Of a stretch of DNA of 64,000 bases, positions 2,504 through 32,822 are shown one piece after another; the stretch's first letter is position 1, and the number at the start of each line of letters is the position of its first letter. A program made the position numbers and the translations under genes. The notes beneath the pieces were generated by a model. It was not told the origin of the DNA. It ran no database searches and saw only the letters and a list, made by a program, of their open reading frames with translations. The stretch lies in assembly GCF_031769215.1 (NCBI RefSeq), contig NW_026781945.1, forward strand, positions 1,240,001 through 1,304,000, read 5' to 3'. This DNA is from Ylistrum balloti (taxonomy: Eukaryota).

Positions 2504-2979
2504 CTATTTCTGTGAACTTCTCTTTTCTGGTCGTCTCAGAGACTCGTTAATCTTGGTAACAATTGTACTTTTCCATATCATATCAATAGCACAACCAGGA
2601 TAGAACAATAGAACATATTTTCTAAGGTAGGACTTCCTTCTCTCATCTAATGCCTTTTTTCCCTTTACACCACCACCATAATAGGAGTAATTCAACCTTA
2701 GACTATCTGGCCCATACAGCTCTTTCCAAAGTCGCACACATAATCTCTTTGCAAAATTCCCTGGGCTTACAGAATTCAGTTTCATATCAAGAAGAGACAG
2801 CTTGTCAAATCTAAATTCTTCTGGTATGCCATCATAAAATCCAGGAGGAATTTCATTGTTCTCCTGACTGAAGAAAGGAGGAAAACTTGTGGTATTCACT
2901 GCCTGATATTTGTTGGCCTCTGTAATGAACCCAATAACAGTAGAATTACTACTAGTCCTCACTACCCAAGACCAGTCAT
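2504..2979 (-). CDS. Paralog A alternative terminal exon, BEN domain (5' boundary uncertain)
   Basis: Open frame 2980 to 2504 reads ...SPGNFAKRLCVRLWKELY...NYSYYGGGVKGKKALDERRKSYLRKYVLLFYP...WKSTIVTKINESLRRP, a typical BEN pattern. Candidate phase-1 acceptors are gtttaag| (2979) and ttcattacag| (2919). A stronger-looking cctcctttcttcag| (2867) is phase 2. Confidence 0.75.
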
Positions 2980-4668: not shown

Positions 4669-4964
4669 CTTTGTAAGATCCCATGTACCAAGAGCTATTT
4701 GGATCTCCACTCATGTTAGCACCTTCATTTGACATTTCTTCTCGAGCCCATTCCTCAATTTCCGCATCACTTGGTTCTTCAAATTCTTCCTGATGCGATG
4801 CACCAGCTTGCATTTGCATTATACTTTGTTCAGCCATATCCACATGCATATCCAGTCCTCCAGTTTCTCCATCACCTAACGCTGCCTCTACCTTCACTAT
4901 ACTTAAATCAGGAGTAAGGTCGGCTGTACTTTCTTGCATGGAATCAGCAATTTCAATTTTTGTG
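4669..4964 (-). CDS. Paralog A constant exon 3 (acidic, ends in phase-1 donor)
   Basis: Acceptor tctgttctttcacag| takes phase 2 from exon 2, giving STKIEIADSMQESTADLTPDLSIVKVE...SWYMGSYK G|gtagga. Clearly homologous to 13194-13474. Confidence 0.88.
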
Positions 4965-5152
4965 CTGTGAAAGAACAGATTCACACATTATAAATACACA
5001 CACATTTTTGTATTAAGAATCTTTTACCATAGTGTAATCGCAAATATCTACATGTTAATATTAGCCATTTACTTAAGGATATGACATTAGAATTTCCAAA
5101 TTTTCCAAGATATTACAAAGACACAAAATAAACAATTATATATTTATATTAC

Positions 5153-6477
5153 CTTTTTCCTTTGCCGTCATCACCACCTGGACCAACATCCATGGACAAG
5201 GAACTGGAATCTGGTACACTCATGGACATTGCAGGTTGTGGTGTTGGCCTAGGTCTACTTGGGGCAGGTGAACTTTGAGAAACGGAAATAGGAGAACTGG
5301 TCACCATTGCTTGCATGGCACTGCCTGCTGCAAATGGCTTTCCTTGACTAGCTGATGGAGTAATGGACACTGGGAATGGCGTTCGTTGAGGTGTACTAGT
5401 CATTTGACTGTCAGAGGTACGAGGCTGCTGCTGGTGCTGTTTTGATGATGAAAACACATTTTCTGAATCTTGTTTTTGTGAAAATCCTGAGAATGGTTGC
5501 TCTTGTCTAAATGATGTTTGTCTGTCTGTCGTAGAAGATGAGGCAAGACCTGGCAAGTCTCGTGAAGATGAAGATGAAGATGGTGATGATTGGGCATGTT
5601 GAGAATCCTGGAATACTGTAAGAGGACTGACTGTTATTGAACCTTGCTGAGGTGTGGATGACGAGCTAATTGGCCCTGGCGGTTGTGTTGCTGACGAGGG
5701 CTTTTCTGGAACAGTCACAATACTAAGATCAGGATCGGTGTTGTATTGACTAGCTATTGCAATGGATATTGATGATGATGTCTTCTGTGATGAACGAGAT
5801 GATGATGGTTGTCCAGAATCTTTTTCTGGAGGCTCTGTCTGTACAAGTTCAATACTTTCTTCCACAATTTCTATCACACCGGGCTGGGAATTCTTCCCAG
5901 TAGCACCTTGACGACCCATGCCTGACCCCAGTTTGGGGACTCTATCCCAGGGATCTGGAGCTCCAGCCATGTAACTATGGGACATGCTTGCTGTATCATC
6001 AGCTTTGTCTGACCCTATCACAGTACCATCCGAGGGACTTGCCCCTCTATTTAACCTTGGTCGCTTACTTCCTGGACTTCCAGGCCGAGGAAAATCTGAC
6101 ATTCGTTTAGCCGCTCCATCATGAACAGTTTTCTGTAAGTCTGTGACACGAACATGACGGAATTCTATCAGATCATTAAAGTTGTATTTGTATTGAGTGC
6201 CAGGAAATGCAATACCCGTTTTGGCATGCATGCATTTGTAAAAGTCAGCAACACATTTAATAACACTGTCTACCTGTAAAAGTCTGGCTACTTTCTCAAC
6301 GTCACGAACATTGTCTTCTGTTAACATCATGAAGCCTTCATATAGATACTGTAGGAATGTGTTGACGGATTCTTGTTTGATATCGGCTGCTAGACGAACT
6401 TCTAGATGTGAACCTGCCGCTGCATTTTCCATTGACTGAAGCATGGGACAAGCTGCCACCAACACAACTCGGTGGGC
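5153..6477 (-). CDS. Paralog A constant exon 2: BTB/POZ core plus long S/P/Q-rich disordered linker
   Basis: Acceptor ttttcccattag|gcc gives AHRVVLVAACPML...FLQYLYEG...VEKVARLLQV, the BTB signature. Phase-2 donor AG|gtaata at 5152. Confidence 0.92.
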
Positions 6478-6865
6478 CTAATGGGAAAAAAGTTCACACA
6501 AACATAGCAGTTGGATAACAATTGGATGAAAGATTATAGTGATGTGGTCATTCAATTATCAGTTTTACTTCTGAATTACTCATGGATTGCACACTTTTCT
6601 AAGTAGTAACACAGCATTTTATTTTTAGAACCTGTAATTTCAGTTTACTATTACAGTGCTTTTAACTGTTCAAGGGAACTTTCACCAGTTTTTTTTTATA
6701 CCTTTTGCCACCTGGGTAAATATAAATTGTAGTGGTCTGAAGTTCAAAGTTTAATATGATTCTTTTAATGTATTTCAAGCAAATCTAACAAGTTGCAAGA
6801 TGTTTTGAGACAGGTGACAAAAACAAACCCTCAGCAAATGCTTTTCTCAACAATTCACTACTTAC

Positions 6866-6991
6866 TTTAGTAATGATTTGACCCGTCTTGATGATAGCGT
6901 CACATAGTAATTGATTTTTCCACATTGCAGACAGCTGACAAAGCAGAGAGCTGGAATGGATCTGGTTCATGTAAACCTTCTGGTAATTCAT
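6866..6991 (-). CDS. Paralog A constant exon 1 (start of BTB domain)
   Basis: MNYQKVYMNQIHSSSLLCQLSAMWKNQLLCDAIIKTGQIITK|gtaagt is phase 0 and joins AHR in exon 2. Upstream acceptor tatatttcag| at 7020 implies a further 5' UTR exon. Confidence 0.92.
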
Positions 6992-7699
6992 CTTGATTTC
7001 TTTTCTCTAATGTTGATAATCTGAAATATATAGAAAAATTGTATGATCAAATTCTAAAATCTAAAAAAAAATTATTTATGCCCCCACCCTTTAATTAATG
7101 CAACAATTAATAGAATTGCAAGACTGCCAGACGTGTTCAACAAAAAAGACTACCATTGCCGTTTTATTCCATATTAAAACTGATTTTTTTTTTTGTATAG
7201 ACTGAATAGCTTATTATGTGCAACATCTGGTTGAACAGGTTTATTTTGACAACATCATGACGTGGATAAATGTTAATCCAAGCAACTAACATTAACAACA
7301 TTAAATTTAAAACCCAAGTTCTCAACAACAATACTTCTGAAATTTTTAAAATCTAGTAACTTAAAAAAAAAATTTCCTCCAATAACATGAACAATTACTG
7401 ATTCCATAGCTCATAGTAATGTATAACCTAGCTCTATATTCTCCATCAGTGTTAGAGGTTAAACATGACGAGAAACTTTTGATAGGTGCCAATGCAATCA
7501 GGTAAACTAGTAGACCTATATTTGGCCAAGCGTGACCTTAATCAAAAGAAACATTTTAAACACGTGATCTTTGTAAAATTCGTTATGCATGTTTTCAAAC
7601 AAAATACAAGAAATTCGTACAACATTATCCTTGATATGGTAATCTTTCATTCCAATACTTTGCAATATAAAACAAACTTAATACACATGAAATCATATT

Positions 7700-9850
7700 G
7701 CTTACCAACGTTTTCGATATATTGGCTAGGTAGTCGCAGTCATATGCTTTTAAATTACTCAATACATTGTACAAAATCCCAATACGATTCATAAAGCATT
7801 ATATATATTCCAAGATGTCGTGTTTCAAGAAGGAAATAAAATCTAGTCCGAAACGCATGCACTGCAACTTGTGAACCGATGCTCATGGCCGCGTGGTCAA
7901 TAATAACCGCGCGCCGGCAAGGTGCTCGTTTGCCTACCATTTACAGGTCGCGTGACGTTTTTCCAAACGTAAACAATAAATACTGACGATTACGTCTGCA
8001 AAGTGGATTGCATGGCAAAAAAATTCTTCATTTGAATTTTTATTCAAAAACCAAATCAAGTCGACATAATTACTTAGGCGAAGAAACATTACGACCAGGG
8101 CATTTTACCTGTTCAGCGTCACGTCGCCGTCGACGGCCGACTTCGCCTCAAATAAATTTAGTATTTTCAAGCAGTTTATGGAAACAATCAAGCTAATATC
8201 AATTTAACCAAATTCAAAAATGTGTTATAATAACCTTGAAGTTTCGGTAAATGCTGTTTCATGCAGAATTTCTGTGGATAACGCTCAATCTTCCTGCTTC
8301 TGGTCACTTTCGTTCATTGTTCCCCGGCCATGGACTCGTTTATTGCGCAGAGTTGTTGCGCAGAACTTGATTGCAAATCACATCAGAGGCACTTCTAGGG
8401 AGAAAAGTAAGACTGCTTATATATTTTCGACAAGATAGATATTAACATCAACAATTTAAAATTTGTGCAGATTGAAATTCAAAGAAACTAGAAATCAATG
8501 AAAATATATTATGTACCACCAAACTAGTCGTATCATTTGTCTAAGATCACCCTCATTTAAAAAGCATTTATTTACTTTGTTAAACTTACTCCACGGACAG
8601 TTTATATGTATGTTTACACCAAAGAAAAATATCTTTATTAGATATGTATCGATCTTAATTATAAACCCACATATATTACCACTTATTGGCTCAGTTATAA
8701 GTTGCAATTTTAATCAGACAATTGATTAATGGTATTTCAGTTTATGTGAATAGAAGATTTCAAGTCGATGAAAAATTACACATACCATAATACTTTGCCA
8801 AATCTACTTACATTAGCGACCAATATCTAATATCATGTTCTCTGCTAACATCTACGAAAAATAACTGCTCTTTTATTGACTACTAGCATTTTGAAATATG
8901 AACGGCAAAAAAGTTTTAATGATAATCTGTACAAAGCTGATAAAGTTTCAAACATATCTATTTCGCTGTCTAATGCGAGAGATCTTAGAACACACAAAAG
9001 TTACAATAATCCAAATGGTAGACGTAAAAATGCATAGAATTTTACACGGACTTCGATGCGTGCCGTGGTAATAATTATAATGAAGTAGTGAGTACACGTT
9101 CACATCTAAGTTTGATTCAAATTCATTATCTCGTATAGTACACTGCTAATGTTTCAGACTTACTTAGATATCAATCGCTTTTTTTCCTAAATCTAAACAT
9201 GCATATTTATCTGATCTAATGAAGTCCTTGATGAAATAGTACTACAAACACATTTAAATTCGTAAATGAACTCTTAATTTCAATGTTACCCTTTGAAGGG
9301 CCCCACATCATATTAATTGAAAAGTTATTGCGCATAGTCTATGCGCAGTACCACGAGCCCTTGGCGTACCAAGCAAATTCGGACCACTGAACAATGGCAG
9401 AGATCGGTAAACTTTAGAAAAATAAGGCCCGCGTTCATTAACGGCAAGCAAGCGAAAGGACCAGGCTATCAACGATCTGTCTTAACATTGTAAGTTGACT
9501 TTGTCTCGTTTCAGAAAGACATATGATGAAAAATAATAATTGCAGTAGAGCAGAAGTTACCGAAACGCATAGCATTTTGCACTGGGCACAATTCTGATAT
9601 TACCGCCATATTTGCAGCATCGTTGCCACAAATTATGCCCGACTTTATTTCTATTTGTCGTACTCATGCCTACTCAATTGATATGTGGCATTTTTGCTCT
9701 ATTTAATTTATAAGATGATTGAAAAGGTGCTTTCTGATGATGTAAATCGACCGATATATGAAACTAGTGACATGAGGGCATGTAACTGTAAACAAGCACC
9801 TGCGCATCCGCCCTCCTAAGCCGGGTGCGTGTGTGTGTATTTGTACCTCG
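7700..9850. promoter_or_regulatory. Probable divergent promoter region or non-coding first exons of both BTB paralogs
   Basis: Lies between the two head-to-head start exons, both of which are preceded by splice acceptors. CpG-rich patches occur at about 7860-7990, 8090-8150, 9329-9480 and 9800-9830 in otherwise CpG-poor DNA. Candidate donors: minus strand at 8108 and 7705, plus strand near 9490. TSS not determinable. Confidence 0.45.
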
Positions 9851-10394
9851 TGTATTGTACACAGGTCGTCTTTATGTATAGAGGGCCATGTACTGTTTAC
9901 GTATATCTTCTTTAACACGCTTGCATGTAATTTTTTGAAACTGAGAACAGTTTTCGTTCCGTAGTAAAAAGACAATGAAACTGAAGAGCTCTGTTAACAT
10001 GTTGTTACAATAATAGCCTATGAAAATAAAAAAAAATATAGTATTATAAACTTCTTCAATAATGTATTTCAATTATATATGTCAATCCTACTATTACTCA
10101 ATACGAGAGTTAACAGTTTAACATAAACCTTTGTTATATATCCCTTTGATTTTATTCCCACACCATGTTAAGTGACAGATTAGTGAGTTATTGTGTCTTT
10201 AACACAAAGTATGCATACAAGACACTTAATTAGCTGAACAGGTTAAGTTAAAAATAAAAAAGAAATGTTAGGACTTCCTGACTTTGATTTTTGTTCAATG
10301 TAAGATTATTTGTTTATTGATGTTAGTTTATGATTTACTGAGAAAATACCCTCAGCCAGGGACGTATAATATGTCCCTGCCTCAGCCAATAAAA

Positions 10395-11095
10395 ATGTTG
10401 GGTGACAATATCCTATAGGGATATCTTGTATAAATAGAACCAATAAAGATCCTACAATGTTGGGTGACAATATCCTATAGGGATATCTTGTATAGATAGA
10501 ACCAATAAAGATCCTACAATGTTGGGTGACAATATCCTATAGGGATATCTTGTATAGATAGAACCAATAAAGATCCTACAATGTTGGGTGACAATATCCT
10601 ATAGGGATATCTTGTATAGATAGAACCAATAAAGATCCTACAATGTTGGGTGACAATATCCTATAGGGATATCTTGTATAGATAGAACCAATAAAGATCC
10701 TACAATGTTGGGTGACAATATCCTATAGGGATATCTTGTATAGATAGAACCAATAAAGATCCTACAATGTTGGGTGACAATATCCTATAGGGATATCTTG
10801 TATAGATAGAACCAATAAAGATCCTACAATGTTGGGTGACAATATCCTATAGGGATATCTTGTATAGATAGAACCAATAAAGATCCTACAATGTTGGGTG
10901 ACAATATCCTATAGGGATATCTTGTATAGATAGAACCAATAAAGATCCTACAATGTTGGGTGACAATATCCTATAGGGATATCTTGTATAGATAGAACCA
11001 ATAAAGATCCTACAATGTTGGGTGACAATATCCTATAGGGATATCTTGTATAGATAGAACCAATAAAGATCCTACAATGTTGGGTGACAATATCC
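10395..11095. repeat. 62-bp tandem minisatellite, about 11.3 near-identical copies
   Basis: Unit atgttgggtgacaatatcctatagggatatcttgtatagatagaaccaataaagatcctaca starts at 10395, 10457, 10519 ... 11077. Confidence 0.97.
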
Positions 11096-11302
11096 CACTG
11101 GAATGTCTTCACTCTTGTATATTTTGTAGATGTGTTTATTCCTTTTTTTTTTTTTTGTTTTAATGCAATTACATGTTCTTTGGAAATTATCGTCGCCATT
11201 ATCATTTGGGGACAGACGTGTAAATTAATAAACTTCTGATCATGAATGAATCATCTTTTTTGCAGGATTGGCCATATATAGTATTTCACACAAGCCAACA
11301 AG

Positions 11303-11437
11303 ATGTCCAGTATGAATTACCAGAAAGTTTACATGAACCAGATCCACTCCAGCTCATTGTTGTGTCAGCTTTCTCACATGTGGAAGAGTCAAATGCTGTG
11401 TGATGCCATTATCAAAACCGGTCAAATTATCACTAAA
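11303..11437 (+). CDS. Paralog B constant exon 1 (start of BTB domain)
   Basis: MSSMNYQKVYMNQIHSSSLLCQLSHMWKSQMLCDAIIKTGQIITK|gtaaga, phase 0. Upstream acceptor tctttttgcag-type site opens the exon at 11266. Confidence 0.93.
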
Positions 11438-11714
11438 GTAAGAAATTTCTATTTATTGAAAGTCTGTTGTCAGTTTGTGGGATTTGATTGAATTTCATTT
11501 TCTTTCACAAAACTTGATATAACCTGTAATCTAGGCTATTTTAAGCTGCCAGTAGATAATGCTTCATTTTGAAATTGACCAAAAATTGATCATTAAACAT
11601 CGCTCACAGAACTTTCATGGTTGTCTCAATTTCAAAAAAGGTAATTTGAGTTTCAAATAAAAAGTTTTTGTGCTTTAAAAATCAAACTTTGAATAATAAT
11701 TTTGCTTTTCTTAG

Positions 11715-12988
11715 GCCCACCGAGTTGTGCTGGTGGCAGCTTGTCCCATGCTTCAGTCCATGGAAAATGCATCGGCAGGTTCACATCTAGAAGTTCGTCT
11801 AGCAGCCGATATCAAACAAGAATCCGTCAACACATTCCTACAGTATCTATATGAAGGCTTCATGATGTTAACAGAAGACAATGTTCGTGATGTTGAGAAA
11901 GTAGCCAGACTTTTACAGGTAGACAGTGTTATTAAATGTTGTGCTGACTTTTACAAATGCATGAATGCCAAAACGGGTGCACCATTCCCAGGATCAGCAT
12001 ATAAATATTCCTTTTCTGGACATGATCTTGCTGAATTTCGTCATGTACGTGCTACTGGCTTGCAAAAAACTGCATCTGAAAGAATAATTAAACGTGTTTC
12101 TGATTTCCCTCGGCCTGGAAGTCCAGGAAATAAGAGACCAAGGTTACATAGAGGGGCAAGTCCCTCAGATGTTACTGTGATAGGGTCAGACAAAGCTGAT
12201 GATACAGCAAGTATGTCCCATAGTTACATGACTGGAGCTCCAGATCCCTGGGATAGAGTCCCCAAACTGGGGTCAGGCATGGGTCGTCAAGGTGCTACTG
12301 GAAAGAATTCCCAGCCCGGTGTGATAGAAATTGTGGAAGAAAGTATTGAACTTGTACAGACAGAGCCTCCAGAAAAAGATTCTGGACAACCATCATCATC
12401 TCGTTCATCACAAAAATCAGCAGCAGTGTCCATAGCAGTAACTAGTCAATTTAACACAGAACCAGACATCAGTGTTGTCAATGTGTTTGGTGCTCCTGAA
12501 ACACAGTCAGCATCTGCTGGCACTGCTTCTGCCAATACTATCACTTCATCTAGTTCATCCCGTGGGTCCATCACCGTCAGCCCGTTAACAATATTTCAGG
12601 ACCCCCATCCTCCATCATCGTCTGCTCCTGAACCGCCCTCCTCATCTGCTGTAGATTCCTCATCAGGTCAAGATCAACAACAAAGATTACCAGAGATGCA
12701 GTTTTCAGGTTTCTCACAAAGACAAGATATGGACAGTGTTTATAGTGCAGGAAAACAGCAAAAGAATACAGATAGTCAGTTAACTAGTACACCTCAGCAG
12801 AGACCGTTTCCAGTGTCTGTGTCGCCCATCAACCAACCAAAACCTTTTGCAGCAGGAAGTGCAATGCAAGCAGGAATTTCCTCACCCTCATCTATGTCCC
12901 TACCACTTGGTTCACCATCTAGCAGTAAATCAGTCCAAAAGCCGAGGAGTGCACCAGCCTCACCCGCTGAACGGGCAAGGGACAACAG
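11715..12988 (+). CDS. Paralog B constant exon 2: BTB/POZ core plus S/P/Q-rich disordered linker
   Basis: Acceptor ttgcttttcttag|gcc gives AHRVVLVAACP...FLQYLYEG...VEKVARLLQV. Phase-2 donor AG|gtaaga at 12989. Confidence 0.93.
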
Positions 12989-13193
12989 GTAAGAACAAAA
13001 AGTTTGGCCAAGATTGAAATCTCCGAATTTTAAAAAAAAAAAAATTTGAGCATATAACTATAGTTCCATGTAGTGAAATTGATCATGACATGCAATTCAA
13101 CTAACATTTATTTAAAGAAATGTTATCTAAAGATGTACTTATATGCTATATTTTAAGTGAAGTTTAATGAATTTGATATATTTCCATTGACAG

Positions 13194-13474
13194 GAGGGCG
13201 TCAGAAGCAACTGGTATGCAGAGTACAGCTGACATGACACCTGACTTGAGTATAGTGAAAATAGAAGCCAGCAATCATGAAACAGGAGGACTCGATATGC
13301 ATGTAGATATGCCAGAGGAGGGGGTGATGCGTATTCACCAAGGCAGGTTACCAGAGGAACAAGAAGACACAAGTGACAAAGAAATAGAAGACTGGGCGCG
13401 TGAGGAAATGTCAAATGAAGGAAGCAATGTTAGCGGTGATCAGAATAATTCGTGGTACATGGGAACATTCAAAG
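13194..13474 (+). CDS. Paralog B constant exon 3, the last common exon, with the phase-1 donor used by all variable cassettes
   Basis: Acceptor tttccattgacag| in phase 2 gives RRASEATGMQSTADMTPDLSIVKIE...SWYMGTFK G|gtaggt. The constant CDS totals 1690 nt (563 codons + 1 nt). Confidence 0.92.
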
Positions 13475-14826: not shown

Positions 14827-17800
14827 CGAATGTCTTAATAGCTGTAGGACAGTAGGGATGATGAGACATGACTACAGGTTGTTTAAGCACTCCTTTATCT
14901 GTGTCATTTCTTGTCTGGTTATTTGCTTCAAGGTAATTTTCATTTTGACATCAAAATGTGATAAAAGCCAAAAATTAAACCTTTTTTAAAATTAATATAT
15001 TTCACAATTAAATGGTAAGATTTTTAAGACCTACTGAATACATTAGATTATTATATTTCAAGAATGATCCAAACATGAAAAGATGCCAGTACTGTCGCCG
15101 TTTTGGAAGTTTTAACCAGACTTGCAATGATTTTTACAATACTATGTAGTATTAATCATTTACTACTACATCAGTATAAGAAATGCTTTGTTCAGTAAAA
15201 AATCCAAGGAAGTTGCTGTTTCATTTAAACTCCCTGGATTGATATTGAACCAGCATGCTTGGCTTTCACTGCACTTTTAACAAAGTTTGAAAATTAAGAC
15301 CTTGGATCAGATAGAAGAAAATTTCCATGAATGGAGTTAGTTTAAAATTTGATTCTTGTTTTAAATTTATCTGACAAGAATTTGATATGTATTTTAAATG
15401 TATCTGACAAGAAATGAAACCAAACTGATATTGATGTTTGCTAACCGACCAAAACATGCTTGTCAAACCCAGAATCTGCTGGTGTAGTTTAATTTCATTT
15501 CCTGTAACTTCTTTGTATAAGCAGGTGCTCCCTATAGCTATAACTGATGAATTATACAAGAATAAGGATAAGCTGTATGTACTGTACAGGTCTAATATAT
15601 GTATATTCATTTCTTTGTTAAGAATGCAGAGTCATGATGAATATTGTTTTTACAATGTTGGAATATTTTATTTGTTGAAATTCCAACTTTATGTCTCATG
15701 GACTTGTCAAGAAAGAGCAATTTTCATTGATAAAAATGAATCCCATTTGTTTGGATGATTATTGCTCTGAAGAAGGATGATCTGCATATGACATCAAAGT
15801 TGGGATTTAAAGCCTAAAAGTACATATACAGGTAGCAGGACTGATCAGTCTAACAGTATTTTAATGATACATCTTGAAAGTTATCTGTGTATGTACTTAA
15901 ACCTGGCAAAAATTAATATGTCACAAGTCCCATCAATACGTGAAAATGTTCCAGTAAAGATATTTACTCTTCAAATACTTTCTACAGCAATGCAAGTCTG
16001 TATTGCAAAATAGTTTTTCTTTACTGAACTGAAGTCAGTAACATAAGGAAATGCTAAATTACCTTTCAGGCCTTGTCTGATAAATATAGCAAATCACTTA
16101 TTGATGGAACTTTAAAGACCTGTGATATTAGTGTTATAGCGTGTTACATTGTTTACAGACCTTTATTGTTCTTTCTAAATTTGGATGCACATGTGAATAT
16201 ATTTGATAATCGCCAGTTTAAATGGGGTAGTCCTTCCCCACACAGTAAATATTTAAAAAGTACATATCAAGTAGTGAAAGTGCAATATGAACAAATTTTC
16301 ATTCTCTTAAACCATTAAATTTTCTGATAGAAAATGCATCCAGCAGTAGTATAATTGAGTGTTTGGTCACAGAAGGTCTGTAAATATATGTACTCGCCTT
16401 AACCAAACAATCAATTTTATTACTTGTGCCTTATGTCCAGTTTCCTGACGTCCCTTTGCACACATACAGTCACATATACAACAATTACAAGTTAGCTTTG
16501 GAGGCTCTTCCTATTAATATGTTAAGCATCATCAGATTTGATAAAATCATAATCGAAAAATTTGAAAGTTGAAAAAAAAAGAAACAAAAAAAAAGTGACT
16601 TAAAATTTAGCAATATAGAAGTAAGCAGTTCATGTATAAAGATATGTTTGGGGTGAGCCTCCTTTATTTACAGCTATAAATACAAAACTGCATGTTTGCT
16701 GGCTGGATCAGAAGGAGGACCTGCAAAAAAAGTTCAATCTGTTGCCGAGTCCAATAAAATTTTGTAGGAACTACAGATTTAGAAATTTCAGGAGGAAAGG
16801 AAGAGTGAAAAAGAGAGAAATTAAAACAAGCATTTTTTTATGATTTTTGATTGATGGATATAAACTTCAGATTGAACTTGGCACAGGTAAGTGATCTCAC
16901 ACGAACATATACACACAGTAACTGGGGAAACCTTGTGGTGGTCTGTCGTATGTTTAAAATAAAATATAACATACAGGCAATGCACCTGCATAATATATCT
17001 CAGAAATCTATCCAAATTGTAAAAAAGATCTATTGGCATTCCAATGCAAGTTTTCTCCAGTGTATGCATTCACCCCTCCCTCCCCACTCCCTGCGCCGAC
17101 CTGGTTTATACACATTATGGAGCTGATCCTCTGAAGCTTGTCTTCAGTGTGTCATATTGGCCTACGAAATGTATATGCTTAATTACTACAAGGAAAGATA
17201 ACTATTGATGAGGACCATTGATGTTTAAATGAATACAGATGATGATAGAGAATGTTTGCCATAAGATATTAAAGGGAAAAAACCCTTGATGAATCACAGC
17301 TTAATAAACTTAAATTACCTACACTGATTTACTGATGACCTTGGAAAATGACCTTCATGAATGCACCATTGTATGACCTATAAAGGATGAAAAGTGTGTT
17401 TGGGGTAGGGGATGGAAATATAACTGATTTACAATACTTGTAGTATATTCTATGTTGAGAGATAAAACTACAGGAAAGTTGCACTATTGATTCTACCTCA
17501 TTAGCAAAGAGAAGACCATCATATCTGTTCTACTGGATGGTGCTGAGTATGTTACAACTGGTTTCCTTGAGGAATTTGGTGTTTGGACAAGTTTCTGGTT
17601 TGGAAATAGACCTGAATTGAGGGATACTTTGGATTGGGGGAGGGGAGAAATAATATTACTGAAATGTAGTTAGGGCCATATACAATCCATTCTGTCAGTG
17701 TTAATACAGGTATTAAACAGTCATGATGATATTAGTGGTCAGTTAATGATACCATGAAAGGAGTGATGAAATCGTGTAGTTTATGGAATGGGTAAATAGC

Positions 17801-17854: not shown

Positions 17855-18462
17855 GCAGAAGACCTGATAAATGGAGAACAGGAGGTCATGTACTTACTGG
17901 GGAATCAAAGCACTTGTCTGCCCCTTCTCAGCTATGGTTACAAAGTCCGACCCTGGCTCTAGATACCTCTTCCAGTGTGTCTTTAGATAATAAAACATCA
18001 ATGATCCTGACAGAGCATTCTTCTTTAGTTCAACAAATACTACTCAATACGCCTAAAGGAAAGAGGCACAATATGTGGCCTTCAGTTATTGTCTCTGATA
18101 AAGGTATAGATGGAAAGTCTGAAGGACCAGAGACATGTTATATTAAACTAGATCCAGAGGTCCAGGAGGCTGTATATGAAATATTTGGTTCTTCCTACTC
18201 TAGACAAAACTTTGCCTGGAGGCTGGTACGTTCTATGTTTGAAGACTCCGAATTAAAGGACCACAATTGTTATGGACGGAAGGGCAAACCTTCACTGGAT
18301 GTTGAGAAGCTGAGCAAGGTGAAGGAGCTTGTATTCTCTTATTATCCTTTGGATGATTGTGTCCTCCAACAGCGTGCATGGAAGGCATGCACTGTTGCCA
18401 TAGACAAGGGTATTAGAAACACTTTCTGTGATTATCACCCTCGGCAACAGTCCAGCGATTAA
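17855..18462 (+). CDS. Variable terminal exon V1: BEN domain
   Basis: Phase-1 acceptor tgtccattttcag|gc. SRQNFAWRLVRSMFEDSELKDHNCYGRKGKPSLDVEKLSKVKELVFSYYP...WKACTVAIDKGIRN is a classic BEN pattern. Confidence 0.88.
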
Positions 18463-19157: not shown

Positions 19158-19645
19158 GAGACTTGACTGGGACTTTCAAGCAGCCATTTTTACCAACCAT
19201 CCAGAATGCAAGTGAGATGGGTACTATGGACAGCAGTTGGTATGGCAACCAGTATGTAGTTCAAACAAGCAGGCAGGTTACTAAGACAGTGGCCAGTGCA
19301 GGTGTCACCAATAAAGTGTTTAACTGTCGAATCTGTTGTGAAAACTATGTTGACAAGGCAAGCCTGAAACAGCACATGTATGACAGTCATAGCCTTCAGT
19401 ATTCTCACTTCTGTTTTGAATGTGGAAAGGGTTTTAAAGCGTATTCTGGTCTGTATGACCACGACAAGAGCAACCATGCTGTAGGGGAAAACCTGCCAAC
19501 CTGTCATGTCTGTGGCAAGTACTTTGCTCGTCAGAGTCGTCTGCTTGTACACATGAGAAAACACTCCAAGGAGCGACCATTTGTTTGCCAGAGGTGTGGC
19601 AAGACTTATAAACACATGCAGAATCTTAAGGAACATGTATGCTGA
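19158..19645 (+). CDS. Variable terminal exon V2: 4 C2H2-type zinc fingers (last one C2HC)
   Basis: Phase-1 acceptor ctctctcttgtttttag|ga. Fingers CRIC...H...H, CFEC...H, CHVC...HMRKH and CQRC...HVC, with an SKERPF linker. Confidence 0.88.
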
Positions 19646-20292
19646 GTGTCCTTGTAAAAAACCACCATGTACAAAATTTTTACTGTCACTTCACCGTCTT
19701 TATAGTGATCAGTGGATATTGTCTCCAGCTTTTGTACTCTTATACTCACAGCTCATACGATTCTTAATATGTCCGAATGAGTGATCAACTGTGATGGATG
19801 GCTGTAGTTTGATGATGTGTCCGCATATGGACCTTTGACTGTCACAGGATGTGGGTGTGGTATGTTATTAAATTATGGAGGGACAAAAATGGCACGTCAT
19901 ACTTCACTCACTGATAATAAGTTGTTTCAGATAAATGTAGTTCTTAATTAAAGTATTACAAATGACAGGATGTACAAGATATATTTGACTTGTAGAAAGT
20001 CTTGGTGTTATCAACAACGTCACAAATGTGATTCTTTACGGATACTTATTTCCAGTTTCAGTAGGAGAGGATTTATTTAAACACAATAAACTGATTGTCA
20101 AAGTTGAAAGTCCATCTTACAGGGGCTGTATTTGATTGTTGTCATGCTCAGGAAATATGCACAGGGACTCCAGCAGATAATCGGTCTAGGTATCTATACT
20201 TAAAACGGGGGTGGGGGGCATATTGCTGCAAGTGAACAACCTTTACAAGCATCAGCCTAAGGTTACCAAACATCCTCTTTTTTCTTATATAG

Positions 20293-20723
20293 GTCATGGT
20301 AATCCAGTATTCAACATGAGTGAGATGACTTTGCCAGGAGATGCTTCAAGTTCCTTTTCAAGGGAGGCCACTTATAGTTGTCAGACCTGCTTCAAAAACT
20401 TTTGGACTCTAGATGAGTTAAACACACATAGTCATTCTCAAACTGAAATGGGATTTGTTTGTAAAATATGTGGATCATCTGCGATCAATAGAAAACAGCT
20501 TGGGGAGCACTTGGTTTCCCAACATTCTGTAGACTATCTCCACTTCTGTGTTGTATGTGGCAAGGGGTTCAAATCCTACTCAGGTTACTATGACCACCAG
20601 CGGACCTATCATGGCACAGGGCCTGTTTGCCCTGTCTGTGGAAAGTGTTTTGCTCGGCATTCACACCTCCAACATCACATGACCAATAGTCATAACACAA
20701 CATCACATGATCAATTGTCATAA
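20293..20723 (+). CDS. Variable terminal exon V3: 3-4 C2H2 zinc fingers
   Basis: Phase-1 acceptor tttttcttatatag|gt. Fingers CKIC...HLVSQH, CVVCGKGFKSYSGYYDHQRTYH and CPVC...HHMTNSH. Paralogous to V2. Confidence 0.87.
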
Positions 20724-21044
20724 CACTACAACATCACATGACAAGTTGTTGTGATATACTAATGGCATCAGATAAAGGCCTTCGGCATGTGTTACATAGA
20801 TGATTAAAAGAAATGGCTGATATTTCATAGGTCCTACGAAAAAGCCTGTATAAACAGTATTCAATGGTACAGTGTACTGTGCATGTGAAAGTTATACTGC
20901 AAGTTAATCAGGATATTTTCTATTCGATGTGGAGATTTCCAGCCAATCACTGACAAGGAATTGTATCATTCTAAGGATGGTTATTCAAGTCTGTGTATAG
21001 AGTAGCACCTTGGCTTAGCCAGGAATGTTGAGTTTGTATAACTG

Positions 21045-21512
21045 GTGAAAGATGGTGGTTCAGTAACAACGAGGACTCGCGTTCTTAAGTATCACTACAT
21101 AGAATGTCACATTTCCTCCCCCTCAAAATATCTCTTTGTTAAGCATCAGAAATTGAAACACCCTTTTGGGAGTAAGAATTCTCTATACTTTATTTGCCAG
21201 TACAAATTTGCCTCTAATGAGTTGAAAAAAGAGCATCTACACGGTTATCACTGTGGGGAGTTTAATTTCTTTTGTTACAAATGTGGGCATGGTTTTAAAA
21301 GCAAAGGCAGGCTTAGTGAACATAATAAGACTAGACACAGCATCAGTCTGTCCAACTCACCTTTTAAGTGGTATATCTGCGGGTGGGCGTGTTCATGTTT
21401 AAGTAAACTGCGAGCACACATGGCTATACATTCAGACACTAGACAGTTTACCTGTAACAGTTGTGGCAGACAATTGAAAAATAAACAAGCTAAGCATATG
21501 TGTTGCGAATAG
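21045..21512 (+). pseudogene. V4: degenerate C2H2 variable exon (probable pseudo-exon)
   Basis: Same finger spacing as V2/V3, but three first cysteines read Y (tac), Y (tac) and W (tgg). There is an in-frame stop at 21039-21041 and only a weak phase-1 acceptor (cactacatag| at 21103). Confidence 0.6.
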
Positions 21513-22132
21513 TAATTCAAATTGTGGGGAAAAAATAACTCATTTCGAATTTAATAGAGTAAAGTGTAACAACTTGATGATGACTATGGTCTGACAGATT
21601 CTCTGGATGTGGTAATATGTGTATGAAGACAGTATGTTGTGTTGAAACTGTATAATTAATGACGAAAAGACAGCATATGTATTGTATAAATTTCTATAGA
21701 ACAGAAAGTGTGTCGTACACTTGAAAGTTTCGTTAAATATTTAAGTTTTAATAAAGATTTCTAATATTATTACAATTATTCTGTTTCATTCTTTATCCGA
21801 ATGTGGAAGGAAACAAATGGATATGTTGAGAAAATTAAGTCGTGATGATGAAAACGCTGGAATAATGGAATCATACCGAATCAGGTTTTTAAGTAGTTAA
21901 TGCAGATCTCAGGAATATCTTCAACTTCAAGAAGAATTTTTTTTTGAAACTTTATGATGCAGCTTTGTTGTACAGTGCTGTCCGTCTTGATGTGGATAAA
22001 GAAAGGCATGTATATCTAACAAATCATTTTTACTTAAAAAATGTGAACTTTTACTTGAACTGAGAAAGTATGTAAAAGCATTGGTACATGGTAACTGGAC
22101 TTGGTAACACAGCCTTTCTTTATCCCTTTCAG

Positions 22133-22515
22133 GACCTGACACTGGTATGTACACAAGCAATTGGCAATATGAAGCTCCAGACATTACCCCCGAGATTGGG
22201 GAGGGACCTGAGGTCCACATCGAGGGTCATGCTATGATACACATCGAAGGCAACAAGAAGGCTTGTGCATTTTGTCAGATGCATAACATTAAAACTAAGT
22301 CAGGCTGGGCAATAAAATCTTACTATAAGTGTGAAACTTGTGATGTACCACTATGTCGGGGTAAAAGTAAACAGTGCTACCAGAGATACCATGAACTGCG
22401 CAGGGAACATGACAACATGTCACCTCGGATGATGCAGAAAGCTATCAAAGCTTCTATGCCAAAACCTGCTAAATTTTCCTTTAAGACAGCAGATCCCCCA
22501 CTATCATTTTGGTGA
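22133..22515 (+). CDS. V5: piggyBac-type cysteine-rich domain (CRD) terminal exon
   Basis: Phase-1 acceptor tttctttatccctttcag|ga. HAMIHIEGNKKACAFC..KTKSGWAIKSYYKCETCDVPLC..CYQRYH. AATAAA at 22563. Confidence 0.9.
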
Positions 22516-23616
22516 TCTGTCCATCAGAAAATCTGGCAGTTTTTATTTTTCACTGTGAACTTAATAAATAAGTGCTATAACAGATCATCTATTGAAAATC
22601 AAATTTGGAAATTCAGATTCTGTTGGAGATTTTCCTCCTCGTGGTTTTTGGTGCGCCAGAAGATGTAGTAATTGTTGTGGACGATCAACACAGATACTTT
22701 GATGTCTAGATATTACTCGGTTCCAAAATGGCTAATCACCAGGATGTTTTTTCAAATATCATGAAATTGGGCTTGTTGATGTCATGATACAATTTTGTGT
22801 GGTCAGCAAGGTTATTTTGAAAGTAAGAAAATATTTAATTGGGACTACGACTATTGATAAGGTGATTTGTAGTATGTCAGGTTATTTCTGAAAAATATAT
22901 ATTGGTAGTTTATATATTTGATAATGATACTGATTGTCAAAGTCGTTCGTAACCGGTTTTGATTTATCAACATGGATTTTTTGTGTCTTCAAATAAAGTA
23001 ATATGAGGTGTGAGGTAAAAAGCACAACTCCGTTATATCTTTATTTTGTAGAAACAAATCAAAACAATGCAGTTGAGGAAATTTTTGCTCAAGTTCATTT
23101 GTAAATAACAGTATTTCTTAAGCACTTTAAGAGTTTGTGTTACATATCCTGTAAACATGTATAATGTCTGATCATATCAGAATTTTTACCTCGAGATGCC
23201 CAACAAAAAGATTTAGACATGCACAGTGGTTATAACACATTATGTTTATGCACATATTTTCAAATGTCTTATTTATAATCATGCATATTGTTTGTGGGAA
23301 TTTTATTGTTGTATTAAAATAAATTTTAAGTTATATTTATCTTATTTCGAGACCTATATAGTGGCATGCTATTTTTTTTTTTTTTTTTTATGAAGAAAGG
23401 CTACCAATATTAGTGTCACACCATCATTGAATGTTTGTTTTCATACCCTATATGGAAATGTTGTGAAATATTTACAAATTACAAATGTCAAAACTGCGCT
23501 GCTGACCCATATTTCTTCAGCAGATCTCGTTTTGTTTGACATATATAGCAAATGAAATTCCAGGTACAGTTGACAGGAAGTGACACTAGTAACCGAGCCT
23601 TTCTTTATAATTGCAG

Positions 23617-24116
23617 GGGGCAGTAGTGTAACCTTCCCGCAGGGTAAGCCCTCTTCAGTTACCATGGCAACTAGCCTGTCGGGTAACAATTCCATGGCTA
23701 ATATGACAACAAGCTTGCTAGGGATTGGTACCAACATGTCCATGGCGACTAATCTGCCAGAGTGGCAAGACCAGATACAAATACAAGGTGTTGACCATCG
23801 CCTCATACATATTGGAGGGAAGAACCGGGCTTGTGCTTACTGTACTATAAGTAAAAATAAAACCAGGTTAGGCTGGGCTAGGAAGTCCTACTACAAGTGT
23901 GATGCATGTGGAGTGCCCCTTTGTCGTGGGGAGACTAATTGCTACGAGCGATATCATGACTTAGTGCAGGAGCACCAACACCTTGTAGACTCCCCCAAAA
24001 ATCTGTACAAATTTCTCCTAAGGAAGTTCTCATCACAAGTAGAAGTAGACTTTGTGCAGGAGACTTTCAAAATGCAAAGCATGGACTTTGGATTGGGCAA
24101 CATAGAACCAAAATAA
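23617..24116 (+). CDS. V6: piggyBac-type CRD terminal exon
   Basis: Phase-1 acceptor tttctttataattgcag|gg. HRLIHIGGKNRACAYC..KTRLGWARKSYYKCDACGVPLC..CYERYH. Confidence 0.9.
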
Positions 24117-24674
24117 AATTTTTGAAATTGAAAAATTTCAAATGTGATTTGCTAAAATAGTTTCATCAGTTGATACAAGGAGAGGAAAGAATGGTTGCCA
24201 AGCCATATTGACTTTTCCATCAGTAACAATGGATTTTAAATTAAGAACCATTTCTGGATCCAAGTTGTTGACTGAACACTGGCTGTCTGTATAAGAACTA
24301 TTCCTGGTTCCTGGATATGTATGGCTGATTCTGATGGCTGTCAGTATATAGAAACCAGATTAATTAAAAAAAGATTAATGGATACTTTATGAAAATAATC
24401 TGATGTCCTGAGTTCAAAATCATCTATATGACACGTGTATTAATGTTTTTTTTAATGCTTCAGTTGAAAATTGTACAACTGAGAAGAAAATAACTTGATT
24501 TCCAAACACCTTGCTGTGTGGAACTAGCACCAATATAAAGTTTTTTTATTAATTTGTTAGTATCCTTGAAGATCAAAACAATGTGATTAAATATATCAAA
24601 AAGTTTTTTTTATTTTTTTATTTATTTTTTTTTTTTTTGATAATTGGGTAATCCTGGTTTCTTTGTCCTTTCAG

Positions 24675-25051
24675 GAACGCCAGTTCCTCAAGAAAACATT
24701 GCCTACATAAGCCAATCAGAAAGTACAGCACACTATCAAAGTAGCCAATCAGAAGGCTTCATACAATCTCAATCAACCAGTCATTCTGAAAGTGTTCCTT
24801 CTTGCATAGTTAAGGACTATGGAACACATGCAACATTCCAATCAGAAATTCCTGGACATAGGCTAGTAACAAGACCAGGGCGTCAACTGAAAGCGTGTGT
24901 GTACTGTCAGTTGAAGAAGGTCAAAACGAGGTCAGGATGGGTGGTGAAATCCTATTACATGTGTGAGGCATGTGGTGTACCCCTGTGCCGGGGTCAGCGG
25001 GAGTGTTACCACTATTATCACCAACTTATTTCAGGACATGGTCCGATGTAG
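24675..25051 (+). CDS. V7: piggyBac-type CRD terminal exon
   Basis: Phase-1 acceptor tttctttgtcctttcag|ga. HRLVTRPGRQLKACVYC..KTRSGWVVKSYYMCEACGVPLC..CYHYYH. Confidence 0.9.
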
Positions 25052-25231
25052 TGGTCAGTGATACAAAAGACATTTGTTTAGATAACATTAATCTTCTTTT
25101 CTCCCCTCGTGTTTGTGTTGGTCTGTGTGTATTTTACCCTTGTGATTTAGTGATAAGATTATAGGGTACAAGTATTAACTGTACCAGGTACTCATGGTCT
25201 CTGTCCTAACTTTTCTCTTTCTCCCTTTCAG

Positions 25232-25611
25232 TGCCTCATGGTGTTCTGAGTCCAAAACGATCCCTTGACTCATTTTTGGGGCCATTTGATGATCATGGCT
25301 CCTATGGGTCAAATGAGCACCTGGGCCTGCTCAAGAGTGGGGAGAACCCGACCATATTAGATCCTAAAGGTGTCATTCACACACAGATAACTTCTCAAGG
25401 ATACAAACTGAAAAAGTGTGTTTACTGTGCATCTCATCGTGTGCGGTCCAAGTCTGGCTACATTGTGTATTGTCGATTCATGTGTCAGACATGTGATGTG
25501 GCATTGTGTAAAGGAACAAGGGCCTGCTTTCAGATGTATCACAAAGAATTATTTCATGAACAAAAAAGCAATGACCAACCAACCTCTGATTCCTCACAGT
25601 ACATTCTTTAA
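25232..25611 (+). CDS. V8: piggyBac-type CRD terminal exon
   Basis: Phase-1 acceptor tctctttctccctttcag|tg. KKCVYC..RSKSGYIVYCRFMCQTCDVALC..CFQMYH. Confidence 0.9.
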
Positions 25612-25701
25612 AATGTTAGGTGCATGTAGGTGTTTTTAATGGCTAGATAAAGGATGAGTTTTATACTGTTTGGATAATTCCAAATCCTTTTATCCTTTCA
25701 G

Positions 25702-26324
25702 ACTCGGCATCAGTATCCCACAGCCAAATGCAAAGCTTTCAGAGCCTTTCAAAAAACTTTGCACCATGTCCTTCCAGACAATCACAAATTCTAGGCCAGG
25801 GGAATATTTCAGGTCACCTAGCAAAGCTTGCTTGCATGTCAGTCCCAGAGTTCCATGGTCAGGTGTACAGTAGTAAAGAGCAGGGTAAAGAAAGCCCAAA
25901 CTTTGGTGTTAATCAGCAAAGAACAGGGTCTTTGTATCTAGGAGGTCATCACCATAGACTTGCTCATCTTCAGGGTCTCAGGAAGTTATGTGTGTACTGT
26001 CAGTTTAATAAGATCAAAACCAAATCTGGGTGGTGGATCTATACCCGTTACAAGTGTGATGGTTGTGAAGTGCCTTTATGCAACACCACGTCAGAACGGG
26101 ACTGCTTCATGCTTTACCACAACTTGATGTACGGGGGTTCCAATGTTGAGGGTTCAAAGGTTGGCCAAGCTTCTCCGCTCATTGAGACTCGAACCTCGGT
26201 CCCTGATCCTGTGCTTGTACAAAGCATTACAAATAATGATGCAAAGGTAGAATTCTCACAAAGCACTTCAACTTCTACCTTTTTAGGACAAAATGTTTAC
26301 AATGCAGACAGAGTAGACAACTAG
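25702..26324 (+). CDS. V9: piggyBac-type CRD terminal exon
   Basis: Phase-1 acceptor ccttttatcctttcag|ac. HRLAHLQGLRKLCVYC..KTKSGWWIYTRYKCDGCEVPLC..CFMLYH. Confidence 0.9.
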
Positions 26325-26421
26325 ATACAAGGATTTTACACGACGTGGCGTGTTAATTACATTATAGATATTGCTGCTACAGTGATAGGAGGGTAATCAA
26401 ATGTCCTTTTATCCTTTTCAG

Positions 26422-26834
26422 AACCAGCCTCAAACCCTTACAGCCATTCAAAATCCTTATTAAATTTATCAGGCCACCTAACAACGATGGCTCGAATGTC
26501 CGTACCAAGTGTGCTGCAAGTGGCACCCCAAAGACAAATGGTCATAGCTCAAAGTCGATTTCCACAAGGTCACCCTCCTCAAGGTCATGTTTTAGAGGCG
26601 AGGACTAGTAGCAAGGGCACACTGATGGTGGACCCTAGCCACCAGGGGGATCTACAACACCGTCTGGTGCACTTAGAAGGCCAAAAGAAGCTGTGTGTTT
26701 ATTGCCAATTAAATAACATAAAAACTAAGTCAGGATGGTGGGTTTATACCTGGTACAAATGTGAAGGGTGTGAGGTACCGCTGTGTAACACGACGTCGGA
26801 ACGAGACTGTTTTATACTCTATCACTCACATTGA
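26422..26834 (+). CDS. V10: piggyBac-type CRD terminal exon (close duplicate of V9)
   Basis: Phase-1 acceptor ccttttatccttttcag|aa. HRLVHLEGQKKLCVYC..KTKSGWWVYTWYKCEGCEVPLCNTTSERDCFILYH. Confidence 0.9.
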
Positions 26835-32655: not shown

Positions 32656-32822
32656 ACAACTATGTTTCGGATTACAATTGCTTAAATTTTATTTCAAGCC
32701 GTATCAATACACAAAAAAACCCAACCCTTTTACAGGCATAGTCTTTTAACTGAATTTTCTCAAATAAGTTCTAGGTTCACTGGGCTTTCACATTCTACAT
32801 CAAAATTTCTTTTTCCTTTCAG

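What the first reader, a model, noticed from the sequence alone, without database searches (positions are those of the whole stretch)
4669..13474. Two head-to-head BTB paralogs with identical exon phases and the same terminal donor: candidates for trans-splicing onto one variable array
Seen: A (minus) and B (plus) have the same three-exon structure (phases 0, 2, 1) and end in AAA G|GTAGG(A/T), so any variable exon fits either gene. Within the window A has one intact terminal ORF with an ambiguous acceptor, while B has 20 intact cassettes. Established: mod(mdg4) and lola assemble isoforms by trans-splicing. Inference: A pre-mRNA could be trans-spliced to B's variable exons. Alternatively A has its own mirror-image array to the left of the window.
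Basis: partly seen in the sequence, partly recalled or inferred. Interest (0 to 1): 0.75.

Follow-up and report, generated by a model that had tools for sequence, protein, structure and literature searches.

The report
Two mirrored scallop BTB isoform-array genes
Two back-to-back scallop genes each join one shared protein-pairing module to dozens of alternative DNA-binding endings, and gene A has its own array of endings just outside the window, so it has no need to borrow its neighbour's.

Summary
In this Ylistrum balloti (scallop) window, gene A (minus strand, exons 6991-6866, 6477-5153, 4964-4669) and gene B (plus strand, 11303-11437, 11715-12988, 13194-13474) have the same three-exon BTB structure. 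Both have phases 0, 2, 1 and both end in AAAG|GTAGG.

The headline idea, that A is trans-spliced onto B's array, is not supported. Its premise was that A has only one terminal exon, and that is an effect of the window's edge. A is RefSeq LOC132565723 with 36 predicted isoforms. All 31 isoform tails I could fetch map at 96-100% identity to A's own strand. They span from the BEN exon in the window (2919-2504) to 61.6 kb beyond the window's left end. That array holds about 43 same-phase cassettes and none lies on the opposite strand.

Shared phase and donor are explained by an old inverted duplication, plus ongoing gene conversion in two tracts of exon 2.

No RNA data could be reached: the only run holding the stretch is genomic DNA. 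Rare trans-splicing is therefore untested, not refuted. One lead remains. B's last common intron carries a perfect U1-complementary pseudo-5' splice site conserved in three scallop genera.

Other first-reader notes of this scan cover the same window.

The parts
6866..6991 (-). Gene A (LOC132565723) coding exon 1, ATG at 6991, N-terminal part of the BTB domain, ends in phase 0
   Evidence: identical to the N-terminus of P0001-P0015 and P0147
5153..6477 (-). Gene A exon 2: rest of the BTB domain plus a long Ser/Pro-rich linker, ends in phase 2
   Evidence: 100% match to Ylistrum balloti isoforms
4669..4964 (-). Gene A exon 3, the last common exon, ends in phase 1, donor AAAG|GTAGGA
   Evidence: the end of exon 3 and the donor are conserved in A and B across species
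2504..2919 (-). First variable terminal exon of A's own array (BEN domain, isoform X26), phase-1 acceptor at 2919. The other ~42 cassettes lie left of the window (L001 17971-84064).
   Evidence: Pfam BEN 5.6e-8; acceptor candidates; P0159 tail maps 100% to 2920-2507; array mapped
6992..11302 (.). 4.3-kb divergent intergenic region between the two ATGs. It holds a 62-nt x 11.3 tandem repeat at 10394-11095.
   Evidence: the same head-to-head layout with a 5.3-kb spacer occurs in Mizuhopecten
11303..11437 (+). Gene B (LOC132565629) coding exon 1, phase 0
11715..12988 (+). Gene B exon 2 (BTB plus linker), phase 2
13194..13474 (+). Gene B exon 3, the last common exon, phase 1, donor AAAG|GTAGGT
16730..16893 (+). 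Conserved element in B's last common intron. It has inverted-repeat arms at 16730-16741 and 16868-16879. They are followed by a perfect 9-nt U1-complementary pseudo-5' splice site, CAGGTAAGT, at 16884-16892.
   Evidence: the fold is not exceptional
17855..18462 (+). B's first variable terminal exon (BEN, isoform X8)
19158..62286 (+). Rest of B's array in the window. C2H2 cassettes start at 19158, 20293, (21042) and 37528. zf-Tnp_2 cassettes start at 22133, 23617, 24675, 25232, 25702, 26422, 28029, 29078, 32823, 34094, 34656, 40838, 43508 and 47164. A DUF3504 cassette uses 58212-58334 plus 61297-62286. All are on the plus strand and in phase 1.
6230..6477 (-). Gene-conversion tract 1 with B 11715-11960 (95-100% DNA identity, perfect runs of 118 and 48 nt)
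5786..6095 (-). Gene-conversion tract 2 with B 12105-12412 (93-100% identity, perfect runs of 70 and 110 nt)

Best explanation
A and B are two separate, divergently transcribed paralogs that arose by an old inverted duplication of a BTB 'constant plus variable' gene. Each has three common exons encoding a dimerising BTB domain and a disordered linker, and these end in phase 1. Downstream on the same strand, each has its own long array of alternative terminal exons. Every terminal exon has a phase-1 acceptor and its own stop codon and encodes one binding module. A's array holds a BEN exon followed by about 42 C2H2 zinc-finger cassettes spread over about 70 kb, mostly left of the window. B's array holds BEN, a few C2H2, many piggyBac-type zinc ribbons (zf-Tnp_2) and a DUF3504 module. 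Each isoform is most likely made in cis, by choosing one terminal exon from the gene's own pre-mRNA (this step is inferred). The identical phases and near-identical donor are inherited features. Gene conversion additionally keeps the BTB core and a second tract of exon 2 nearly identical. If A and B interact, the likelier route is BTB-mediated heterodimers at the protein level, not shared exons at the RNA level (inferred).
For: The exon structure and phases are shown directly. The organism and gene identities come from 100% protein matches: LOC132565723 for A, with isoforms X1-X36, and LOC132565629 for B. A's gene range is 68.6 kb on A's strand. All 31 A isoform tails map to that strand between L001 14072 and 78643. 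Twenty-nine map at 100% in one piece. Three are two-cassette isoforms whose pieces map at 92-100%. There are 43 cassette clusters and none on the opposite strand, and nearly all have phase-1 acceptors. Only the BEN tail is encoded in the window; the other tails are at most 57% like anything there. Five of the seven B tails tested map 100% to plus-strand cassettes. X2 maps as two exons at 98-100%. X4 has no match in the window. Three RefSeq isoforms of A splice one cassette into a later one (X10, X32, X36), which implies a pre-mRNA that spans several cassettes. Both genes, with 33-49 (A) and 20 or more (B) predicted isoforms, exist in Pecten, Mizuhopecten and Argopecten. For gene conversion, four-fold-site divergence between A and B is 0.03-0.04 in two tracts. 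It is 0.20-0.26 between orthologs and 0.35-0.73 elsewhere.
Against: The isoforms are RefSeq predictions. A cis-only gene-model pipeline cannot report trans-spliced products, and I could not inspect its RNA support. No RNA reads were available. The choice of terminal exon in cis, and polyadenylation after each cassette, are inferred rather than shown. AATAAA spacing after the stops is no better than expected in AT-rich DNA. B's last common intron holds a conserved strong U1 site, a feature that promotes trans-splicing in mod(mdg4) and lola (PMC4387717).
Confidence: 0.85

Rival explanations
1. Cross-gene trans-splicing. A's exon-3 donor is joined, between separate RNA molecules, to acceptors of B's plus-strand cassettes and perhaps the reverse. 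This would give A-BTB proteins with zf-Tnp_2 or other B-type modules.
For: All cassettes of both arrays accept phase 1, and the two donors differ by one base. [quoted passage not shown] The two genes lie 4.3 kb apart head to head here and 5.3 kb apart in Mizuhopecten.
Against: A does not lack exons: it has about 43 cassettes of its own. None of the 73 listed A-type proteins from four scallops carries zf-Tnp_2, though cis-only models could not show it anyway. In Pecten and Argopecten the partner gene is not within 10 kb upstream. A's last common intron has no strong U1 site in three species. No transcript evidence could be obtained.
Confidence: 0.05
2. Trans-splicing within each locus, as in mod(mdg4). 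The common-exon transcript ends in the last common intron and is joined to cassettes transcribed from their own promoters. The conserved U1 site in B's intron would act like the TSA core.
For: A perfect CAGGTAAGT lies 3.4 kb into B's 4.4-kb last common intron. It is the only such site in the 50 kb of B's array. It is conserved with its flank in Mizuhopecten and Argopecten, next to conserved inverted-repeat arms. The mod(mdg4) and lola precedent is in PMC4387717.
Against: No cassette lies on the opposite strand in either array, so nothing in the layout demands it. A has no such site. The site can instead be read as the donor of a 16-nt exon that puts a stop (G|AT TGA) directly after exon 3, or as a U1 site that suppresses premature polyadenylation. 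The hairpin fold is not better than shuffles, z = -1.29. Cassette-to-cassette splices in the RefSeq models fit read-through transcripts.
Confidence: 0.1

Closest known systems
Drosophila lola (longitudinals lacking)
   Same: N-terminal BTB in common 5' exons. One of many alternative 3' exons, mostly C2H2 zinc-finger pairs, is joined at a single shared donor. This gives dozens of isoforms that can dimerise through the BTB domain.
   Different: The scallop BTB is of the general ZBTB/BACH kind. Its best solved matches are ZBTB17, BCL6 and BACH1. It lacks the FxLRWN-type TTK motif, which is reported absent from Mollusca (PMC11426971). There are about 43 cassettes in A against about 20 in lola. Trans-splicing is shown for lola and not shown here. 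The scallop locus is a mirrored pair.
Drosophila mod(mdg4)
   Same: BTB common exons plus more than 30 alternative terminal exons. B has a conserved strong U1 site in the last common intron.
   Different: mod(mdg4) cassettes encode FLYWCH domains and some lie on the opposite strand, which forces trans-splicing. Here 0 of about 64 cassettes are antisense, and the modules are BEN, C2H2, zf-Tnp_2 and DUF3504.
Vertebrate NACC1/NACC2 (BTB plus BEN) and ZBTB proteins (BTB plus C2H2)
   Same: Single isoforms of A and B have exactly these two-domain layouts. BTB-BEN occurs in A X26 and B X8, and BTB-C2H2 in most A isoforms.
   Different: In vertebrates each layout is a separate gene. Here one gene offers all of them as alternative endings. 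Orthology was not tested.

Membership tests
lola / mod(mdg4)-type constant-plus-variable BTB locus | BTB domain encoded by common 5' exons | tested here: met
   Pfam BTB in exon 2 of A and B; spliced common regions
lola / mod(mdg4)-type constant-plus-variable BTB locus | Array of alternative terminal exons, each with its own stop, all joined to one donor in one phase | tested here: met
   B. A. The isoform lists are RefSeq predictions.
lola / mod(mdg4)-type constant-plus-variable BTB locus | TTK-type BTB (N-terminal FxLRWN motif, arthropod-specific) | tested here: not met
   The N-terminus MNYQKVYMNQIHSSSLLCQL has no such motif. The nearest solved BTBs are ZBTB17, BCL6 and BACH1. PMC11426971 reports no TTK motif in Mollusca.
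lola / mod(mdg4)-type constant-plus-variable BTB locus | Variable exons on the opposite strand (mod(mdg4)) | tested here: not met
   All tblastn hits of the tails lie on the gene's own strand: 0 of 1052 hits on L001 are antisense, and all window hits are on the plus strand
lola / mod(mdg4)-type constant-plus-variable BTB locus | Isoforms made by intermolecular trans-splicing | not testable with these tools
   The only run holding the stretch is genomic DNA. The RNA runs hold 0.05-0.07 of the words. No transcript-derived fragments were found.
lola / mod(mdg4)-type constant-plus-variable BTB locus | Conserved strong U1-binding pseudo-5' splice site in the last common intron (TSA core) | tested here: inconclusive
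   B has CAGGTAAGT at 16884, conserved in three genera. A has none with 7 or more paired bases in Ylistrum or Mizuhopecten, and only a 7-nt site in Pecten. Its function is untested.
BTB-BEN proteins (NACC1/NACC2-like) | N-terminal BTB and C-terminal BEN in one polypeptide | tested here: met
   A X26 (P0159) and B X8 (P0076); Pfam BEN 5.6e-8 and 3.9e-5; mapping. Orthology to NACC genes was not tested.

The most novel reading that the evidence does not exclude
The scallop arrays may use intermolecular trans-splicing as mod(mdg4) and lola do. The conserved U1 site and flanking inverted repeat in B's last common intron would act as the promoting element. Because A and B share phase and donor, some A-B chimeric mRNAs could form. 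That would be the first lola/mod(mdg4)-style trans-splicing outside arthropods, arising on a non-TTK BTB gene.
Probability: 0.1. Interest if true: 0.75.

Novelty: new member of a known kind. Interest (0 to 1): 0.35.

Why it matters
The specific proposal, that A borrows B's exons, loses its reason, because A has the larger array of the two. What remains is a clear molluscan counterpart of the insect lola and mod(mdg4) design, built on a different type of BTB domain. Two mirrored genes offer about 43 and at least 21 alternative binding modules. They are conserved across four scallop genera. Gene conversion keeps their dimerisation cores nearly identical. I found no paper describing such loci in molluscs in four literature searches, although RefSeq annotates them as ordinary multi-isoform genes. 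They would be useful for asking whether this architecture, and perhaps its splicing mechanism, evolved more than once.

Tried and rejected
- RNA evidence. The run search returned 23 runs with only 0.05-0.07 of the words and one real holder, X24. Laid on 22100-28099, X24 proved to be genomic DNA: its contigs run unbroken through introns, with no joints. X1 laid nothing. No splice junction could be read.
- Transcript-derived protein fragments. A search for fragments containing A exon 3 found nothing.
- Look-ups of A's locus through isoforms X16 and X2 failed, because only the longest product is on record. It worked with X1. B orthologs by X2 also failed.
- A docking/selector scheme. The arms of the intronic inverted repeat are not enriched elsewhere in the window: 9 matches against 11.7 expected.
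- The hairpin as a stable structure. z = -1.29, not exceptional.
- A known RNA family in 1-20000. Nothing came near a gathering score.
- Shared intronic elements between A and B. There are no shared 14-mers, and blastn similarity stops 10 nt past the donor.
- Poly(A) hexamers after cassette stops are uninformative in AT-rich DNA.
- The large protein-representative search, structure prediction and fold search were not used. The domains were already settled by Pfam.
Full report
**What is in the sequence**

- Gene A runs on the minus strand: exon 1 at 6991-6866, exon 2 at 6477-5153, exon 3 at 4964-4669.
- Gene B runs on the plus strand: exon 1 at 11303-11437, exon 2 at 11715-12988, exon 3 at 13194-13474.
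- In both genes the exons end in phases 0, 2 and 1.
- The last donors are AAAG|GTAGGA (A) and AAAG|GTAGGT (B).
- Both genes encode a BTB domain followed by a long Ser/Pro-rich linker.
- DNA similarity between the two is confined to the exons, at 70-89%. It stops 10 nt past the exon-3 donor. They are therefore old paralogs in inverted orientation, with 4.3 kb between their start codons.

**B's array**

Downstream of B, all on the plus strand, I find 19 single-exon cassettes with phase-1 acceptors between 17855 and 47933. There is also a two-exon DUF3504 cassette at 58212-58334 plus 61297-62286.
- Pfam assigns BEN to the first cassette.
- C2H2 fingers are assigned to cassettes starting at 19158, 20293, 21042 and 37528.
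- The piggyBac-type zinc ribbon zf-Tnp_2 (PF13842) is found in all four such cassettes that were scanned. The others resemble these by sequence.
- One B isoform tail (X4) is not encoded in the window, so B's array runs on to the right.

**Identity of the genes**

A word search with A's exon 2 gave 100% matches to predicted proteins of Ylistrum balloti on a 3.03-Mb contig.
- A is LOC132565723 and B is LOC132565629.
- A has isoforms X1 to X36.
- Nearly all of A's isoforms end in C2H2 fingers. None of the A-type proteins listed, from four scallops, carries zf-Tnp_2.
- Orthologs of both genes, and a third paralog, exist in Pecten maximus, Mizuhopecten yessoensis and Argopecten irradians. A's orthologs have 33 to 49 predicted isoforms.

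**The decisive point: A has its own array**

The tails of A's isoforms are not encoded in the window. The best similarity to anything there is 57%, except for the BEN tail, which maps 100% to 2920-2507 on the minus strand.

With the longest isoform (X1, P0147) I fetched the locus L001. It overlaps the window base for base over 16,991 nt. Window position p corresponds to L001 position 10001 + 6991 - p. The gene range is 68.6 kb on A's strand.
- All 31 A tails I hold map to that strand between L001 14072 and 78643.
- Twenty-nine map at 100% in one piece. Three are two-cassette isoforms whose pieces map at 92-100%.
- The array therefore runs from the BEN exon in the window to 61.6 kb beyond the window's left end.
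- Counting all similar ORFs gives 43 cassette clusters: one BEN and about 42 C2H2.
- Not one of 1052 hits lies on the opposite strand.
- Nearly all cassettes have a good phase-1 acceptor at the place where the RefSeq tail starts.
- The 'ambiguous' acceptor of the BEN exon is at window 2919.

**What this does to the trans-splicing idea**

The idea rested on A having a compatible donor but almost no exons of its own. A in fact has the larger array.
- Phase compatibility between the arrays is real but inherited. Both arrays begin with a BEN cassette, and these two are 31% identical over 84 residues. C2H2 cassettes follow in both. The ancestral gene therefore already had an array when it was duplicated in inverted orientation.
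- Nothing in the layout requires trans-splicing. In mod(mdg4), by contrast, some cassettes lie on the opposite strand.
- Three RefSeq isoforms of A (X10, X32, X36) splice from inside one cassette into the acceptor of a later one. This fits pre-mRNAs that read through several cassettes.
- These are predictions from a pipeline that only builds cis models. I could not see their RNA support, so this is weak evidence.

**RNA could not be examined**

- The run search gave only one true holder of the stretch.
- Laid on 22100-28099, that run turned out to be genomic DNA of another individual. Its contigs run through introns without joints, and it differs at about 0.7% of positions.
- The RNA runs listed held 5-7% of the words. 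The one I laid (X1) placed nothing.
- A search for transcript-derived protein fragments containing A exon 3 was blank.

Cross-gene trans-splicing is therefore unsupported and unmotivated, but not refuted. I put it at about 5%.

**Gene conversion between the paralogs**

Four-fold degenerate sites were compared between A and B within Ylistrum.

| Region (A residues) | A vs B within species | Comparison |
|---|---|---|
| 43-125 | 3% (14% in Mizuhopecten) | orthologs 8-22% |
| 185-275 | 4% (also 4% in Mizuhopecten) | orthologs and cross-species A-B pairs 20-26% |
| rest of the common region | 35-63% (up to 73% in Mizuhopecten) | - |

At the DNA level the tracts are A 6477-6230 with B 11715-11960, and A 6095-5786 with B 12105-12412. 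They contain perfect runs of up to 118 nt. Paralogs within a species being closer than orthologs across species means conversion recurs in each lineage. This agrees with another first-reader note on this stretch. Exon 3 and its donor lie outside the tracts.

One consequence, which is inferred: the BTB cores of A and B are almost identical. A and B isoforms can therefore probably heterodimerise. That would mix C2H2 and zinc-ribbon modules at the protein level with no exchange of exons.

**A lead that keeps a mod(mdg4)-like mechanism open for B**

- B's last common intron (13475-17854) contains one perfect 9-nt match to the U1-complementary consensus, CAGGTAAGT, at 16884. It is the only such site in the 50 kb of B's array within the window.
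- The site and its flank (CAGATTGAACTT, 4-5 nt, CAGGTAAGTG) are conserved in Mizuhopecten and Argopecten, at similar depth in the intron.
- An upstream arm, AAGTTCA(A/T)TCTG, is complementary to the flank and is also conserved.

Against reading too much into it:
- A's intron has no comparable site in three species.
- The predicted fold is not better than shuffled sequence, z = -1.29.
- The arms are not repeated upstream of cassettes.
- The site can equally be the donor of a 16-nt exon that would place a stop (G|AT TGA) right after exon 3, giving a BTB-only product.
- It could also be a U1 site that suppresses premature polyadenylation in a long gene.

**Synteny**

- The head-to-head pair is also found in Mizuhopecten, with A's ATG 5.3 kb from B's.
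- In Pecten the 10 kb upstream of A holds no B exons. In Argopecten the 10 kb upstream of B holds no A exons.
- The close spacing is therefore not universal.
- In Argopecten another BTB paralog follows each array on the same strand.

**Comparison with what is known**

The design is that of lola and mod(mdg4): a BTB constant part and many alternative terminal modules joined at one donor.
- The BTB here is not the arthropod-specific TTK type. Its nearest solved relatives are ZBTB17, BCL6 and BACH1, and the TTK motif is reported absent from Mollusca (PMC11426971).
- The module set (BEN, C2H2, zf-Tnp_2, DUF3504) also differs.
- Single isoforms look like vertebrate NACC1/2 (BTB-BEN) or ZBTB proteins (BTB-C2H2).
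- Four literature searches found no description of such loci in molluscs. RefSeq annotates them as ordinary multi-isoform genes.
- I file this as a new member of a known kind, probably convergent with the insect loci.

**Verdict**

The headline interpretation is not supported. Interest is moderate (0.35) for the mirrored arrays, the recurrent gene conversion and the conserved intronic U1 site. It would be high only if RNA data showed trans-splicing.

Noticed in passing
window 16730-16893; L004 about 15430-15610; L002 14944-15118: Conserved element in B's last common intron. It has inverted-repeat arms followed by a perfect U1-complementary CAGGTAAGT, kept in three scallop genera. It could be a TSA-like site, the donor of a 16-nt stop-carrying exon (G|AT TGA), or a U1 site against premature polyadenylation.
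   Followed up: partly
window 16328-16514 (L004 15020-15207; L002 about 14640-14735): Non-coding block in the same intron that is 83% identical between Ylistrum and Mizuhopecten. That is as conserved as the neighbouring exons. Invariant motifs include GAAGGTCTGT and TTATGTCCA. Function unknown.
   Followed up: partly
window 6230-6477 with 11715-11960, and 5786-6095 with 12105-12412: Two gene-conversion tracts between the inverted paralogs. Synonymous divergence is 3-4% against 35-63% elsewhere. For the second tract, paralogs within a species are closer than orthologs in both Ylistrum and Mizuhopecten.
   Followed up: yes
L001 21561-83529 (A's array, left of the window): 27 of 43 A cassettes begin with GT directly after the acceptor AG (for example AG|GTGAAC, AG|GTAAAT). 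Splicing exon 3 (...AAAG) onto them would recreate a 5' splice-site-like AAAG|GT. This resembles recursive-splice ratchet points. It may instead be no more than an inherited GGT glycine codon. B's cassettes do not show it.
   Followed up: no
window 22120-47164 and L001 17950-78009: Each array has its own acceptor signature, as expected from tandem duplication within each array. B shows TTTATCCTTTCAG. A shows TTCTTGTnTTGTnYAG.
   Followed up: partly
L001 28312, 31505 and 42180 joined to 33201 and 42823: RefSeq isoforms X32, X10 and X36 of A splice from inside one cassette into the acceptor of a later cassette, in another frame. Cassettes are therefore not always terminal.
   Followed up: partly
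window 10394-11095: A 62-nt unit repeated 11.3 times at 99% identity, in the divergent intergenic region 200 nt upstream of B's start codon.
   Followed up: no
window 21042-21512: This C2H2 cassette ORF has no convincing phase-1 acceptor (best polypyrimidine score 12 of 20). It may be a decaying cassette.
   Followed up: no
L002 113314-115684; Argopecten locus (no DNA): In Argopecten a further BTB paralog follows B's array, and another follows A's array, each on the same strand. The cluster may therefore hold four array genes.
   Followed up: no
window 22100-28099: Run X24 is genomic DNA of another individual. It shows about 41 substitutions and 8 small indels in 6 kb, nearly all in introns.
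   Followed up: no
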